A stretch of 64,000 bases of DNA. Origin: Haliotis cracherodii (lineage: Eukaryota). The DNA is taken from the NCBI RefSeq assembly GCF_022045235.1, contig NW_027266272.1:7750001-7814000 (forward strand), read 5' to 3'. A program made the position numbers and the translations under genes. The notes beneath the pieces were generated by a model that saw only the letters and a program-made list of their open reading frames with translations, searched no databases and was not told the DNA's origin. Numbering within the stretch: position 1 is the first letter of the stretch; each line of letters starts with the position of its first letter. This document shows, in pieces, positions 31,482 to 38,662 of the stretch.

Positions 31482-31608
31482 TGATCTTATTTCGACCCAC
31501 ACTGGAACCCATTGAGTTCAAGACCCAACAGATACGGAGGATGGAAAACATCGACCCAACAAACAGCATGGCTTCCGTTACTTTATTGTCACCAATGCGT
31601 GCTATACA

Positions 31609-32810
31609 TTAGGTGTGGGTGGTGTTACAGACAGCTCGGTAGGCGGGGCCGTACTGCTGGGGGACGAACTCACACCGACAGGTCACACCCCCCTCCGTGT
31701 ACACCTCCCCCTCCTTCAGCACCTTGTCGCCATGTTGACAGTTTAGACCTGTAAAAAAAGCGACAAAACTTTGTTTATAATCGTAAGAAATCTCTAGTGA
31801 GGCATGTCAATTAGCAGTCTGAAAAAAACACAGAAACACGTAGATATAAACACACAAAAAGTTCACCTTCATTCTTCGTGTTTGAAACGGGGACCATTGG
31901 GCAGATATCACGGACCAGTCCTACAGTCATAATTCACTCACTCACTCACTCACCCAAATCCATCCTACCACCCACTTACTCGCTCGCTCACTCACTCACT
32001 CACTCACTCACTCACTCACTCACTCACTCAAACCCACTCACTCACTCACTCACTCACCCACCCAACTCACTCACCCGACTACTCACTCAGCAGTGGGCAC
32101 TTCTATGCAGCCTACATCATTCCCTAGCATACAGCTCAGATCACTTTGAAGACATTGGGCTTGGGAGGAAGATGACTCACATGACATTTGTGTTAAACCA
32201 CTCAATTCACTCACTCTCACTTTGGCCCGTGAAGATCCGGTGTAGAATAGGTCTTCAGCATTCCATGTTTGCCGTAAAAGGCGACTGTGCTTGTCGTAAG
32301 AGGCGACTAACGGGATCGGGTGGTCAGGCTCGCTGACTTGGTTGATACATGTCATCGGTCCCAACCACGTTGATCGATGCTCATGTTGTCAATCACTGGA
32401 TTGTCTGGTCAAGACTCGATTATTTACAGACTGCCGTCATATAGCTGGAATATTGCTGAGTGCGGCGTTAAACAACAAACCAAACCAAACCACTCACTCT
32501 CAACCATACTCAATAACTCGCTTACAGTCTTAATACGGCAAATCTTACCATCGGGGCACTCCTGACAGCACTGGGATGACAGGTAGGTTGGGTTGACACA
32601 ATGCGTCGGCGAACAGGTGATGTACACACAGTTGACCGAGCGGCCCTCGGCACAGACACAGGGCTGACATGTACTCTTCATGAACGTCTCCCCGATGGCA
32701 AAGGCCTTGCTTCCATAATAGCAGGTAGTCGCGGAGTCGAGGGTCGTCAATGGAGAGCCGATGCAGGTTGCGATAATTCCACAACAAACTACCCACGCTG
32801 CTATCTGCAT
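31609..32810 (-). CDS. Secreted VWC-domain protein, VWC2/Brorin-like (gene 8); exons 32810-32549, 31748-31609
   Basis: Signal peptide MQIAAWVVCCGIIATCIG, 10-Cys VWC ending CCQECPDG; donor G|GTAAGA; acceptor ttttttacag|; exon 2 GLNCQHGDKVLKEGEVYTEGGVTCRC...AVCNTTHT*; AATAAA at 31587-31582. Confidence 0.92.
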
Positions 32811-33289
32811 GTTTCCAATGGCGTATGTAGTTTACAACAATCTTGTGTTGCAATGATCTACATAGATAACAAAGTATGAGCAATATGTTGACGTTGTCCG
32901 CACTATCAACGATTGGCTTTACAAGGATCAACTGCAATGGTTAGAAGTCCTTCACAGGTAGCCATGAAAACATCAACGCCAAGCTGAATAATAACCAGTG
33001 TCAATCATTCAAATGTCTGGTCCAGACTCGACTGTTTACAACCGCCGCTATATAGCTGGAATATTGCGGAGTGCGGCGTTAAACACCATACTAACAAACA
33101 ATCTCAGGTGAAGGCGTGGACCACATATACGTATGGAAGCTGGACAGGGACATCATCTCAATGTGTTTTATGCTAACTATGGCTTCGGCAGCACATCAGA
33201 CTCTGCCACGACTATTTAACAACAAGGACCATACTAATCTTATTGCTGCGGTTTAGTCGCCAAGTGACCTGTATAAAACGTGTGCCACT

Positions 33290-35996: not shown

Positions 35997-36567
35997 GTTT
36001 CCAATGTCGTGTGTAGTTTACAAAAACATTGTGTTGCAATGGTCTACATAGATAACAAAATATGAAACATGTGTTGACGCTTTGAATGATATACATGAGA
36101 ATAATGGAAGCTATTTTGATATAAGTGTGGTTGTTGGATTTCTTAGATATTTGAATAGGCGCAGATTCATTCTTAGGCACAACTGACGACGCGGCCAAGT
36201 TGCTGGTAAAGTTACAAGCTATACTTAGCAGCCATTTTATCCAAACTATTCCCGATCGCGGTTTTACAAGAATCAACTGCAATCGTTAGAAGTACTTAAA
36301 AGAGAGCCAAGAAAACATCTACAACAATCACTTTGGTGAACCCCGTGAAGATCCGGTCTTCAGTTACCAATGCGTGTCGTAAGAGGTGACTAACGGGATC
36401 AGGTGGTCATACTCGCTGACTTGGTTGATACATGTCAACGTAGTCCAATTGCGCAGATCGATGCTCATGATGTCAATCATTGAATTGTCTGATCCAGACT
36501 GGAATATTTATAACCGACAGCGGTGAATTTCAACAGATACTTTATTGTCACCAATGCGTGCTATACA

Positions 36568-38662
36568 TTAGGTGTGGGTGGTGTTACAGACAGCTCGGTA
36601 GGCGGGGCCGTACTGCTGGGGGACGAACTCACACCGACAGGTCACACCCCCCTCCGTGTACACCTCCCCCTCCTTCAGCACCTTGTCGCCATGTTGACAG
36701 TTTAGACCTGGAACAAGCATGATTCTCTCAGCACCTGGGAGGTGAACATTTCGCGAAACTTTCGTCTCATTTTGCAATTCAACGGAACAGACACACTTAG
36801 AATGGATATTTAGCAAATACAAAGGACGTATTTAGGTAATACTGTCCTAACTACATCAATTATTAAGCTTGTGAATGTTTACGCGTTATCTAGATTGAAT
36901 TTGGATAACAATGACATTTTATAAACATTAGGTAATGTCATCGCAATGTGCAAAGTTGACGTGCCGGGATCCCCTGATTGTGGATTGAAGCTGACCCCAA
37001 TGAAATGTTTCTCGTGCATCAGCGCGCCCTTTATAATCCTGTGTCTGCCATGTGTATTGCAAATACAACAAATTCTAATTTCCCGCGCCATATGATGCTG
37101 ACACTGCAGCGGAAATAAATGCAGCATCTTCCCGAGGCAAGAGAGTTTACTGACTTTAAAAGTCCTGTTTCCACCCTTACCGAACTGGGCTGGAATTTCT
37201 GTGCTCGATCGTAGCGCCATCAGTTGCTGTTAGGAGTTATGTCCCTTCTATGCCTCTCCTATGGACCAATCAGATTCCACCTCTCGTGTCACTTGCATTT
37301 GCTTCAAACAAAATGGCGGCGCCCAGTCAGGACGATCTGATCGACAATCTAGATCTATATTGTGATAAAACGGTTCTTACTTCACGTAGTGCATCAAATC
37401 ACGTGAGCACCTTAATTAAAAACATGAAAAGAATTGGAAAAGATCTGTTGACAACGAGTTGGCGGTGCACATGCTTTGCAAATCCTGCAATCGACCGAAC
37501 TCTGCATGACAGTTTACGAACCGGATTTCCATTTCGTTTGGACAATGGACAATGCATAGATTCGTTAGTACAGCTAAAAGTCCATTATACCAGCCTAGTT
37601 CGGCAAGGGTGGAAACTGGACTTTTATAGTCGGTTAACTCTCTCGCCTTGGGAAGATGTAACTGCAGTTGTCCGCGTCGGGTCGAATCCTGCGCTGATGT
37701 GAGCAAGCCGAGAAGGCGTTGCCAACTGTGAATCGAGAGTCCCGACGACAGGTCTGCCTGGACCAGAGGTTGGAACAAGTTCCAACGTGTCAGCGGAAGG
37801 AGGAGGAGGACTCGACGTAAGTCGAATAGACCCCCGATGAACTGAAGGGCCTGGGAGGGAATCAACGCCGACGTCTTTTAAGGCGATTTGCCAACCGAGT
37901 TGCTGAATAACCCGGAGAGTAAATCCGATCTGGTTGTGAAGCAACCGAGACGAGGGGTCGCTCGTCAGGCAGTCGTCTGTGTGCGAACTGACGAGGATCC
38001 CCCGCTGGTGTAGGAACGTCCCTAGGGGCTTGGTGACACGAGTGAAAGGCCACGAGGCCGTAGATTATCCGTGCTTGACAAGTGGTGTTGTATTAAACAG
38101 CCGAGTCCCATTGTTTCCCATTTGTGGCTTTTGGTATTCTTAGTGGGGATTTAGTACAAGATGCTCTTCCTCGTCACATTGTTTCCAATACAAAATATAC
38201 AACTGTCCAATCTCCAACCTCACGTTTCAGAAAAATGTTCCAGGAAAACATTCACTTATGGAAGTTGGGCAAGGGGCAAGAAACATAACTCATTTTACAT
38301 TGGCGTTGAACACCACTCACTCACTCACTCATTCACCCATCCACACCCAATAACTTGCTTATTGTCTTAACGCAACTCTTACCATCAGGGCACTCCCTAC
38401 AGCACTGGGATGAGGAGTAGGTTGAGTTGACACAATGTGTCGGCGCACAACTGATGTACACACAGTTGACAGAGGGGCCATAATTCTCTTCAGCACAAAC
38501 ACAGGGCTGGCACTCGTTCTTCATGAAAGTCTCCCCAATGGCGAAGGCCTTGTTGCCATACTGGCAGCTACCCCGGGGGTCGGGGGTCGTCAATGGAGAG
38601 CCGAAGCAGGTTGCGATAATTCCCAAACTAGCTGCCCACGTTGCTATCTGCATGTCGTCCAT
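36568..38662 (-). CDS. Secreted VWC-domain protein, VWC2/Brorin-like (gene 10); exons 38662 (or 38653)-38383, 36707-36568
   Basis: MQIATWAASLGIIATCFG signal peptide, 10-Cys VWC with a 3-aa insertion ending CCRECPDG; donor G|GTAAGA; acceptor ttgttccag|; exon 2 identical to that of gene 8. Confidence 0.92.
37670..38100 (-). mobile_element. DIRS-like retrotransposon RT fragment
   Basis: Broken frames FTRVTKP..RGILVSSHTDDCL, QQLGWQI, PSQALQFIGGLFD, WQRLLGLLTSA are typical of DIRS RT/RNase H. Confidence 0.65.

What the first reader, a model, noticed from the sequence alone, without database searches (positions are those of the whole stretch)
31579..38662. Genes 8-10: diverged exon 1, homogenised exon 2, with identity ending at the mRNA boundaries
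Seen: exon 2 of genes 8 and 10 is identical over 140 nt and gene 9 differs at one base. Exon 1 of genes 8 and 9 differs at 16 of 87 amino acids, and gene 10 differs further with a 3-aa insertion. For gene 10 the identity stops right at the acceptor CAG and about 3 nt past AATAAA; flanks on both sides look unrelated. Silent sites are identical too, so protein-level selection alone does not explain it. Inference: exon-limited, possibly cDNA-templated, gene conversion keeps a constant C-module while the N-terminal VWC diversifies, giving the same variable/constant outcome as loci 5-7 by another route.
Basis: partly seen in the sequence, partly recalled or inferred. Interest (0 to 1): 0.75.

Follow-up and report, generated by a model that had tools for sequence, protein, structure and literature searches.

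The report
Gene conversion homogenises abalone exon 2
Three neighbouring abalone genes for small secreted cysteine-rich proteins keep their last exon almost letter-for-letter identical by copying it from gene to gene while their first exons drift apart, which is a clear but ordinary case of gene conversion.

Summary
Three tandem two-exon genes lie on the minus strand. Two of them match black-abalone RefSeq proteins exactly. Their first exons are old (dS 0.34-0.36). Exon 2 is identical between genes 8 and 10 over 173 nt: the acceptor CAG plus 170 nt, ending 3 nt past AATAAA. Gene 9 differs at one base, a Gly-to-Cys change. These are the only copies in the 1.18-Gb genome. Chance and protein-level selection are excluded (P 8e-14 for all sites; 5e-5 for silent coding sites alone).

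Independent short-read contigs of another individual and of two sister species break exactly at the same boundaries. A polishing artefact is therefore unlikely.

This is interlocus gene conversion, but nothing points to a cDNA template:
- The gene 8/9 tract is 264 nt and includes 44 nt of intron and 47 nt of 3' flank, with old-divergence edges.
- Gene 10's tract ends where residual homology ends; introns here have turned over almost completely.
- The 3' end of exon 1 is not co-converted.
- There is no poly(A) trace.
- Exon 1 shows dN/dS of 0.23-0.50, which is no evidence of diversifying selection.

The same scan has already noted similar exon-level conversion elsewhere in this genome. This is a new member of a known kind, of low to moderate interest.

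The parts
32549..32810 (-). Gene 8 exon 1: signal peptide plus VWC domain, 262 nt, ATG at 32810, GT donor follows 32549.
   Evidence: Translation. Pfam VWC2L_2nd 35 bits and VWC 31.4 bits, both above cut-off. Its translation equals the first 88 residues of RefSeq protein P0003.
31579..31748 (-). Gene 8 exon 2: 45 codons plus stop, a 3' UTR of about 30 nt, and AATAAA at 31582-31587. The true 3' end of the mRNA is not mapped.
   Evidence: Only 3 copies exist in the whole genome.
35735..35996 (-). Gene 9 exon 1.
   Evidence: Its translation equals the exon-1 part of the H. rufescens isoform X3 protein P0006, 0 of 88 differences.
33766..33935 (-). Gene 9 exon 2. One private substitution at 33876 (Gly to Cys).
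38383..38662 (-). Gene 10 exon 1, with a 3-codon insertion. The ATG at 38662 is the one used by the RefSeq model P0008.
36538..36710 (-). Gene 10 exon 2 plus the acceptor CAG. This 173-nt block is identical to gene 8 positions 31579-31751.
   Evidence: Contigs from run X2 (another individual) and from sister species B and C end exactly 30 nt inside it, at 36681.
31532..31795 (-). Gene 8 side of the gene 8/9 conversion tract (equals 33719-33983 in gene 9). It is 264 nt with 1 substitution and 1 one-base indel, and includes 47 nt of 3' flank and 44 nt of intron.
   Evidence: The edges 31516-31531 and 31796-33 onward (31796-31833) keep 8 differences in 53 positions.
36340..36530 (+). 3'-truncated copy of a very high-copy repeat. 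It belongs to gene 9's upstream region and ends about 8 nt from the 3' end of gene 10's identical block. It marks a heterology or deletion there.
   Evidence: 85% match to the repeat in gene 8's intron at 32288-32426. Word depth of 6.8e4 to 3.3e5 in bins 36274-36675.
36711..37124 (-). Gene 10 intron next to the acceptor. It is single-copy sequence, unrelated to the intron flanks of genes 8 and 9.

Best explanation
Genes 8, 9 and 10 are old tandem duplicates of a two-exon gene for a small secreted protein. Exon 1 encodes the signal peptide and a VWC domain. Exon 2 encodes a 45-residue, four-cysteine C-terminal module.

Ordinary non-allelic (interlocus) gene conversion, templated by genomic DNA of a neighbouring copy, repeatedly overwrites the exon-2 block, so exon 2 evolves in concert while exon 1 does not. 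A tract can only run as far as the two copies still pair.

Between genes 8 and 9 the paired block is 320 nt, and the tract covers its central 264 nt, intron and 3' flank included. In gene 10, indels, a truncated repeat and intron turnover have removed all flanking homology. The only pairable block is therefore the exon with its splice and poly(A) signals, and it is homogenised end to end.

Shown here: the mosaic divergence, the tract anatomy, the loss of flank homology, and the same repeat boundaries in independent reads. Inferred: the recombinational mechanism, its recurrence, and that selection on the acceptor and AATAAA set where the flank deletions could stop.
For: - Age contrast: exon 1 dS is 0.361, 0.336 and 0.358 for the three pairs. 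Exon 2 has 0 silent differences at about 31.5 silent sites and 0 differences in the 3' UTR. P = 7.6e-14 over all sites and 4.7e-5 for silent sites only.
- Gene 8/9 tract: the core 31532-31795 has 1 difference in 264 nt, against 8 in 53 at the edges (Fisher 3e-6). The core includes 44 intron nt and 47 nt of 3' flank.
- Intron turnover: apart from microsatellite matches, only 85 + 7 nt of gene 8's 800-nt intron align with gene 9's 1,799-nt intron. Complete loss next to gene 10's exon 2 is therefore unsurprising.
- Whole-unit duplication of gene 10: about 58 nt of intron on the donor side of its exon 1 still aligns with gene 8.
- Gene 10's exon-2 flanks: single copy and unrelated. A truncated high-copy repeat abuts the 3' boundary.
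- Copy number: only 3 copies each of exon 1 and exon 2 in the 1.18-Gb genome.
- Independent reads: in X2, another individual of the same species from another study, contigs end at 33795 and start at 33909 and 36681. Each of these is exactly 30 nt (k-1) inside the block. Species B and C contigs also start at 36681, and B's record 1 ends at 31751. C's exon-2-only contig (152 nt, 0 differences) has depth 27, against 8-13 for neighbouring unique contigs.
- Other species' proteins: H. rubra's two paralogues differ at 7 of 45 residues in exon 2 and 17 of 88 in exon 1, so exon 2 is not intrinsically invariant. The H. rufescens model X1 carries a gene-10-like exon 1 with an exon 2 that differs at 3 of 45 residues, whereas the window's gene 10 differs at 0 of 45 from gene 8.
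Against: - For gene 10 there are no old-divergence edges, so the direct signature of a tract inside older homology cannot be shown.
- Conversion that reaches the very last base of a 173-nt homology block needs heteroduplex repair up to the heterology, or several events. Neither was observed.
- Protein trees are weak. Exon 1 groups gene 10 with H. rufescens X1 at 100/100 support. The exon-2 clade has only 82/85 support. Whether the duplication predates the H. rubra split is unresolved.
- In species D one contig runs unbroken from 36538 to 37154 across the acceptor (record 21). This suggests its gene 10 exon 2 is not identical to its paralogues. But the contig's mean depth (20.8, against 9-14) suggests shared words. 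This is unresolved.
- Species C's exon 2 shows 0 differences in 152 nt from the window species, although exon-1 blocks differ by 3.2-4.7%. That hints at extra constraint, although about 3 differences were expected and the P of roughly 0.03-0.08 is my own rough estimate.
- All reads laid were assembled contigs, so internal differences between copies in other individuals could be hidden.
Confidence: 0.8

Rival explanations
1. cDNA- or RNA-templated conversion. A reverse-transcribed or RNA copy of a gene 8/9 transcript served as the repair template for gene 10, so that only exonic letters were replaced.
For: - In gene 10 the identity covers exactly the exon plus CAG, and ends 3 nt past AATAAA. 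Both flanks are unrelated.
- cDNA donors have been argued from exon-only homogenisation in fungal ribosomal-protein genes (PMC6993855, passages read).
Against: - The gene 8/9 tract in the same array contains 44 nt of intron and 47 nt of 3' flank, so a genomic template is demonstrably at work here.
- The three identical bases beyond the exon (CAG) are intronic.
- The 3' end of exon 1 is not co-converted (differences 5, 15 and 16 nt from the donor site), and the intron is retained.
- Identity stops 3 nt after AATAAA, before a usual cleavage site, and there is no A-run.
- Both boundaries coincide with the recipient's homology limits. These are present with the same flanks in sister species, so they say nothing about the donor.
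Confidence: 0.07
2. This is not conversion but a recent non-homologous insertion or duplication of an exon-2 copy behind gene 10's first exon. An array of first exons that once shared one exon 2 would then have acquired extra copies.
For: - Gene 10's exon 2 has no flanking homology at all.
- A neighbouring sub-cluster in the same window has three first exons and one exon 2 (earlier finding s1-829579; the exon hits are seen).
Against: - Contigs from sister species B, C and D carry gene 10's exon 2 joined to the same intron flank or 3' flank (records 13 and 21, and the contig starts at 36681). The copy is therefore older than those species splits.
- H. rufescens has a gene-10-like exon 1 with its own slightly different exon 2.
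- A functional acceptor (polypyrimidine tract plus CAG) sits exactly at the junction.
- Genes 8 and 9 show old edges around exon 2, which indicates whole-unit duplication.
Confidence: 0.04
3. Assembly or polishing artefact. Reads of three similar exon-2 copies were cross-mapped and the consensus was made uniform.
For: A 173-nt block in three copies is shorter than or similar to short-read length, so cross-mapping is possible. Only assembled contigs, not raw long reads, were laid.
Against: - Independent k-mer contigs of another individual (X2) and of species B and C break exactly k-1 = 30 nt inside the same block boundaries.
- Species C's exon-2 contig has 2-3 times the depth of neighbouring contigs.
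- An independent H. rufescens assembly gives the same exon-2 protein for two models.
- Polishing cannot turn 16-18% divergence into 0%.
Confidence: 0.04
4. Extreme purifying selection on the nucleotide sequence of exon 2 (an RNA element, or an overlapping function) has preserved identity since the duplication.
For: Species C's exon 2 is identical to the window's over 152 nt although neighbouring blocks differ by 3.2-4.7%.
Against: - Exon 2 as RNA folds no better than shuffles (z = 0.06), and there is no Rfam family.
- Exon-2 proteins of H. rubra and H. asinina differ from the window's at 6-9 of 45 residues, and H. rubra's two paralogues differ at 7 of 45.
- In the gene 8/9 pair, intron and 3' flank letters are homogenised too.
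Confidence: 0.02

Closest known systems
Interlocus (non-allelic) gene conversion and concerted evolution of tandem paralogues with mosaic tracts. Examples are globin, opsin and MHC genes, from general knowledge, and the GOT1 paralogues of the copepod Tigriopus (PMC3728101; search listing and start of abstract only).
   Same: - Short tracts of hundreds of bases inside old duplicates.
- Silent sites are homogenised.
- Regions of persistent divergence lie next to the tracts.
- Tract length (173-264 nt) is in the usual range for non-crossover conversion. That range is recalled, not tested here.
   Different: In one recipient (gene 10) the tract fills the whole remaining homology block, which happens to equal the terminal exon plus its signals.
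cDNA-donor gene conversion, as proposed for fungal ribosomal-protein paralogues (PMC6993855; passages of sections 8, 10, 16 and 18 read). That paper cites Derr and Strathern 1993 for yeast.
   Same: Exon sequence, including silent sites, is far more alike than intron or flank sequence.
   Different: - Here one tract includes intron and 3' flank.
- The upstream exon is not converted.
- Introns are kept.
- The criterion of dS lower than intron divergence is met for gene 10 only because its intron is unalignable. That paper's supplementary tables were not seen.
Other exon-level conversion cases noted by this scan in the same black-abalone genome (s1-847929 and s1-820427).
   Same: The same genome and the same pattern: a short exon-centred stretch is kept identical between otherwise diverged neighbouring paralogues.
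   Different: These are different gene families on other pieces of the genome. I did not re-test them.
Genes with several first exons and one shared downstream exon: the neighbouring sub-cluster at 23222-30661 of this window (s1-829579).
   Same: The same protein family and the same outcome at the protein level: a variable exon-1 part and a constant exon-2 part.
   Different: Here each first exon has its own exon 2. Constancy comes from DNA copying, not from shared splicing. The H. rufescens model X2 hints at cross-gene splicing, but that could be a mapping artefact of the near-identical exons.

Membership tests
Interlocus gene conversion between tandem paralogues | Segments of one gene pair show sharply discordant divergence, silent sites included. 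| tested here: met
   Exon 1 dS is 0.34-0.36, against 0 silent differences in exon 2. Exon-1 blocks differ at 12.5-18.2% of positions, against 0-1 differences in 173 nt.
Interlocus gene conversion between tandem paralogues | The tract is embedded in older homology, and the old divergence resumes at its edges. | tested here: met
   Met for genes 8 and 9: 1 difference in 264 nt in the core, against 8 in 53 at the edges, Fisher 3e-6. It cannot be tested for gene 10, which has no flanking homology.
Interlocus gene conversion between tandem paralogues | Phylogenetic incongruence: orthologous grouping outside the tract and within-genome grouping inside it. | tested here: inconclusive
   - Exon 1: gene 10 groups with H. 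rufescens X1 at 100/100, and gene 9 equals X3.
- Exon 2: gene 10 equals gene 8 and differs at 3 of 45 residues from X1's exon 2. The clade support is only 82/85.
- Only proteins were available, from 4 species.
Interlocus gene conversion between tandem paralogues | The identity is real in the organism and not an assembly product. | tested here: met
   Contig breaks lie 30 nt inside the block in an independent individual and in two sister species. A collapsed exon-2 contig has 2-3 times the neighbouring depth. Only contigs were laid, with no long reads.
cDNA/RNA-templated gene conversion | Homogenisation is confined to exonic letters, and intron and flank letters are never included. | tested here: not met
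   The gene 8/9 tract holds 44 intron nt and 47 nt beyond AATAAAGTA. Gene 10's identical run also includes the intronic CAG.
cDNA/RNA-templated gene conversion | The tract continues across the exon-exon junction into the upstream exon, or the intron is lost. | tested here: not met
   Genes 8 and 10 differ at columns 237-239, 255, 256 and 266 of the 271-column exon-1 alignment. All three introns are present.
cDNA/RNA-templated gene conversion | The 3' boundary lies at the poly(A) cleavage site, possibly with an A-run remnant. | tested here: inconclusive
   Identity ends 3 nt after AATAAA, and no A-run follows.
VWC (von Willebrand factor type C) domain proteins | Match to the Pfam VWC or VWC2L-like models at or above the curated cut-off. 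| tested here: met
   - Gene 8 exon 1: PF23334 at 35.0 bits (cut-off 27) and PF00093 at 31.4 bits (cut-off 27.6).
- Gene 9: PF23334 at 31.1 bits.
- Gene 10 is below both cut-offs (25.7 and 24.7 bits).
- The exon-2 peptide has no Pfam match at E <= 1.
- A profile of 7 proteins found no PDB sequence match at E <= 0.1.

The most novel reading that the evidence does not exclude
Homogenisation of exactly the terminal exon may not be a by-product of where homology survives. It could reflect either a transcript-templated repair route, or selection for interchangeable last exons in an array where first exons can also splice to a neighbour's exon 2. The H. rufescens model X2 suggests such splicing. On this reading, DNA copying and shared splicing would be two routes to one 'variable head, constant tail' design in this protein family.
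Probability: 0.07. Interest if true: 0.6.

Novelty: new member of a known kind. Interest (0 to 1): 0.25.

Why it matters
The case is a clean, small textbook example of partial concerted evolution in a mollusc. Within one three-gene array, one exon is about 0-0.6% diverged while the other is 12-19% diverged, and the boundaries are resolved to the base.

It carries a practical warning. When flanking homology has eroded, a conversion tract can look exon-limited and invite a cDNA explanation that the data do not require.

It also explains why annotation pipelines merge such neighbours into one gene with 'isoforms', as in H. rufescens. Near-identical last exons make spliced reads ambiguous.

It does not open a new mechanism or a long-standing question.

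Tried and rejected
- Intron transposons as a neutral yardstick. The elements with inverted ends in the introns of gene 9 (34325-34809) and gene 10 (37125-37658) are 79% alike. By eye, however, their flanking duplications differ. I treated them as independent insertions and did not use them.
- A 47-nt deletion to explain gene 10's 3' boundary. After AATAAAGTA, gene 10 continues with 7 letters that recur 47 nt further on in gene 8's flank (seen in the alignment). This is suggestive only. 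My rough chance estimate is under 1%, and I made no claim from it.
- Remnants of the gene 8/9 flanks elsewhere in gene 10's intron or downstream region. None scored above shuffles. The best local hit lies in an upstream block and is marginal.
- GC-biased conversion. GC3 is 0.78 in exon 2 against 0.62-0.67 in exon 1, but other family members' exon 2 range over 0.54-0.82. This is not informative.
- RNA-level constraint. The fold z-score is 0.06, there are 0 Rfam matches, and ARAGORN finds 0 tRNAs. Calling the high-copy repeats tRNA-derived would therefore be only my visual impression.
- Sister-species nucleotides by other routes. A protein search with the exon-2 peptide found no candidate. A metagenome-contig scan with a 30-nt exon-2 word found 0 matches.
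- Structure. AlphaFold2 on 7 aligned public proteins gave a mean pLDDT of 52.4, too poor for a fold search, so none was run. A PDB sequence search gave 0 hits.
- Trees. Monophyly of the North-Pacific copies in exon 1 is neither shown nor rejected (support 19/0). The AU test on exon 2 could not run because rows were identical (script error). My earlier idea that the duplication predates the H. rubra split rested on raw distances (11, 16 and 21 differences in 88 residues) and is not established.
- Species D's unbroken contig over the acceptor (record 21) could not be interpreted. Of the 'other letters' rows, 203 were not shown, and no second read-laying run exists.
- Literature. Searches listed no paper on this abalone gene cluster or on its conversion. 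One search found 0 papers. Supplementary files were not opened.
Exon 1 and exon 2 were searched separately.

Full report
**What is there.** The window is from an abalone genome (G000, contig 9; 1.18 Gb in 80 contigs). Between 31579 and 38662, three two-exon genes lie head to tail on the minus strand.

| Gene | Exon 1 | Exon 2 starts | Intron length |
|---|---|---|---|
| 8 | 32810..32549 | 31748 | 800 nt |
| 9 | 35996..35735 | 33935 | 1,799 nt |
| 10 | 38662..38383 | 36707 | 1,675 nt |

Exon 1 encodes a signal peptide and a ten-cysteine VWC domain. For gene 8, Pfam gives PF23334 at 35 bits and PF00093 at 31.4 bits. Gene 10 falls just below both cut-offs. Exon 2 encodes 45 residues with four cysteines, a stop codon, a 3' UTR of about 30 nt and AATAAA. 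It has no Pfam match.

The separate exon translations of genes 8 and 10 equal the RefSeq proteins named for Haliotis cracherodii, P0003 (133 aa) and P0008 (139 aa). Exon 1 and exon 2 were searched separately. The genes belong to a larger cluster of VWC two-exon genes in this window (tblastn).

- Genes 8 and 10 share an exact run of 173 nt, 31579-31751 = 36538-36710. That is the acceptor CAG plus 170 exonic letters, ending 3 nt past AATAAA.
- Gene 9 differs at one base (33876, Gly to Cys).
- Exon-1 blocks are 87.5% (genes 8/9), 77.2% (8/10) and 76.5% (9/10) identical by BLAST.
- At the protein level the differences are 16, 21 and 28 of 88 residues, with a 3-residue insertion in gene 10.
- The whole genome holds exactly three copies of each exon, so exon 2 is not part of a dispersed repeat.

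**It is not chance and not protein-level selection.**
- Exon 1 has dS 0.361, 0.336 and 0.358, and dN 0.084, 0.148 and 0.180.
- Exon 2 has no silent difference at about 31.5 silent sites and none in the UTR.
- At the exon-1-block substitution rate, zero differences in 173 nt has P = 7.6e-14. Using only silent coding sites, P = 4.7e-5.
- Exon 2 is not intrinsically frozen. The two H. rubra paralogues differ at 7 of 45 exon-2 residues and 17 of 88 in exon 1. H. rubra and H. asinina differ from the window's exon 2 at 6-9 of 45 residues.
- As RNA, the exon folds no better than shuffles (z = 0.06), and no Rfam family matches.

**Anatomy of the tracts.** Around exon 2, genes 8 and 9 share a 320-nt homology block (31516-31833 against 33704-34022).
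- Its central 264 nt (31532-31795) carry 1 substitution and 1 one-base indel.
- The two edges (16 and 38 nt) carry 8 substitutions in 53 aligned positions, like the exon-1 block (Fisher 3e-6).
- The core includes 47 nt beyond AATAAAGTA and 44 nt of intron.

This is the classical signature of a conversion tract inside older homology. Because it contains intron letters, its template was genomic DNA.

For gene 10 the identical block is flanked on both sides by sequence with no detectable relation to the flanks of genes 8 and 9:
- Global alignments give z = -1.3 to 2.5.
- Local searches of the whole gene 10 intron and downstream region fall within the shuffle range.
- The 414 nt of intron next to the acceptor are single copy in the genome.

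**Why gene 10's boundaries sit at the exon ends.** Non-coding sequence in this array has turned over almost completely.
- Even between genes 8 and 9, only 85 + 7 nt of the introns still align, apart from a shared microsatellite.
- Gene 10 is a whole-unit duplicate. About 58 nt of intron on the donor side of its exon 1 and about 50 nt upstream still align with gene 8.
- At the 3' side, a 3'-truncated copy of a very high-copy repeat (36340-36530, with word depths) belongs to gene 9's upstream region. It ends about 8 nt from the block. In the gene 8 to gene 9 spacer, the same repeat is followed by about 600 nt, a minisatellite among them. A deletion reaching up to the poly(A) signal is therefore the simplest reading.

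Deletions cannot remove the acceptor or AATAAA without killing the gene. The surviving homology in gene 10 is therefore the exon plus its signals. Conversion, which needs pairing, can homogenise that block and nothing more. This last step is inference.

**Independent reads.** All four runs laid were assembled k = 31 contigs.
- In X2 (same species, another individual and study), the contig from gene 9's 3' flank ends at 33795. The contig into gene 9's intron starts at 33909. The contig into gene 10's intron starts at 36681. Each is exactly 30 letters inside the block as bounded by gene 10.
- Contigs of sister species B and C also start at 36681.
- B's record 1 runs from gene 8's 3' flank through exon 2 and ends at 31751.
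- C's record 13 spans gene 10's 3' junction.
- C's exon-2-only contig (36558-36709, 0 differences) has depth 27, against 8-13 for neighbouring contigs.

So the repeat structure and its boundaries exist outside this assembly and predate these species splits. Exon-1 blocks of B, C and D differ from the window by 3.2-4.7%.

Results that do not fit neatly:
- Species D's record 21 crosses the acceptor unbroken (36538-37154; 29 other letters, 1 gap). That suggests a non-identical gene 10 exon 2 in D, yet its depth (20.8) suggests shared words.
- B's record 1 is not broken at 31579.
- X2's record 24 is not broken at 33748.
- 203 'other letter' rows were not shown.

Internal differences between copies in other individuals therefore cannot be excluded.

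**Other species' proteins.** The exon-1 search found 2 clusters with 8 members in total.
- H. rufescens isoform X3 has an exon-1 part identical to gene 9 (0 of 88 differences).
- X1 and X2 have a gene-10-like exon 1 (5 of 94 differences).
- X2 and X3 carry the window's exon-2 protein exactly. X1 carries a variant with 3 of 45 differences, including loss of an otherwise invariant cysteine.

Exon 1 therefore follows orthology ({gene 10, X1} at 100/100). The window's gene 10 exon 2 equals its neighbour gene 8 rather than X1's exon 2. This fits conversion after, or repeatedly around, the species split. But the exon-2 tree is weak (82/85), and whether the paralogues predate the split from H. rubra is unresolved.

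RefSeq files the three H. rufescens models as isoforms of one gene. This may reflect real cross-gene splicing, or ambiguous mapping onto near-identical last exons. I could not test which.

**The cDNA idea.** Exon-only homogenisation has been used to argue for cDNA donors (PMC6993855, passages read). Here the criteria fail or are uninformative:
- One tract in the same array includes intron and flank.
- The intronic CAG lies inside gene 10's identical run.
- Exon 1's 3' end is not co-converted. Genes 8 and 10 differ 5, 15 and 16 nt from the donor site.
- The introns are retained.
- Identity stops 3 nt past AATAAA, and no A-run follows.
- Both boundaries are the recipient's homology limits.

The poly(A) site itself could not be mapped. 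No listed run is on record as RNA; six (X15-X20) are only guessed to be RNA. I put this reading at about 7%.

**'Diversifying' exon 1.** dN/dS is 0.23-0.50. That is divergence without evidence of positive selection. With three sequences, no site test is possible.

**Comparison and verdict.** This is interlocus gene conversion (concerted evolution) of one exon in old tandem duplicates. The process is well known, and this scan has already recorded it in two other gene clusters of the same genome (s1-847929 and s1-820427; not re-tested by me). Searches listed no paper on this particular cluster. The notable detail is that erosion of flanking homology makes the tract look exon-limited. It is a new member of a known kind, with interest of about 0.25.

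Noticed in passing
window 38746-40537: A 40-nt minisatellite with 44.8 copies at 90% matches. It begins 84 nt upstream of gene 10's start codon, inside what should be its promoter region.
   Followed up: no
window 33300-33554: A minisatellite with a 20-nt unit and a 98-nt higher-order period at 97% matches. It lies in the spacer between gene 8's upstream region and gene 9's 3' end. The gene 9 to gene 10 spacer lacks this stretch.
   Followed up: partly
window 34325-34809 and 37125-37658: Two elements of about 0.5 kb, each with 61-72-nt inverted ends, about 79% alike. One lies in the intron of gene 9 and one in the intron of gene 10, at similar distances from the acceptor. By eye their flanking duplications differ, so they are probably independent insertions of one MITE-like family.
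   Followed up: partly
window 31215-31482, 32200-32490, 34874-35149, 35447-35733, 36340-36530: Copies of very high-copy short repeats, with word depth of 1e5 to 1e7 in all four runs of four species. They often end in (ACTC)n. ARAGORN calls no tRNA in them.
   Followed up: partly
window 32894/32895: Contigs of sister species B, C and D carry about 211 extra letters here, upstream of gene 8 (records 2, 8 and 16). The window species lacks them, as X2's record 23 is contiguous. Gene 9 has about 180 extra letters (36080-36259) at the matching place. This looks like a species-specific deletion in gene 8's upstream region.
   Followed up: no
window 36681-37152: In another individual of the same species (X2, record 28), gene 10's intron differs at 18 of 281 laid letters. 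The piece skips from 36808 to 37000. Several of its letters (at 36721, 36767, 33 more at 37033, 37110 and 37115) are shared with species B, C and D. This is either a deeply diverged haplotype or derived alleles in the reference individual.
   Followed up: no
proteins P0002, P0006 and P0007 (H. rufescens): RefSeq files the gene-9-like and gene-10-like first exons as isoforms X1-X3 of one gene. X2 joins the gene-10-like exon 1 to the standard exon 2. This is either read-through splicing to the neighbour's exon 2, or a mapping artefact of near-identical exons.
   Followed up: no
window 33876: Gene 9's only exon-2 difference turns a conserved Gly into a fifth, unpaired Cys in the C-terminal module. 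No protein with this variant was among the 8 database members. Whether it is fixed, polymorphic or an assembly error is unknown.
   Followed up: no
window 8460-12343, 19174-19365, 23324-30595 and 41057-41902: At least seven more VWC first exons and four more exon-2-like pieces of the same family lie in the window (tblastn). Their exon-2 peptides are 33-50% identical to that of genes 8-10, so the 'constant' module is constant only within this trio.
   Followed up: partly
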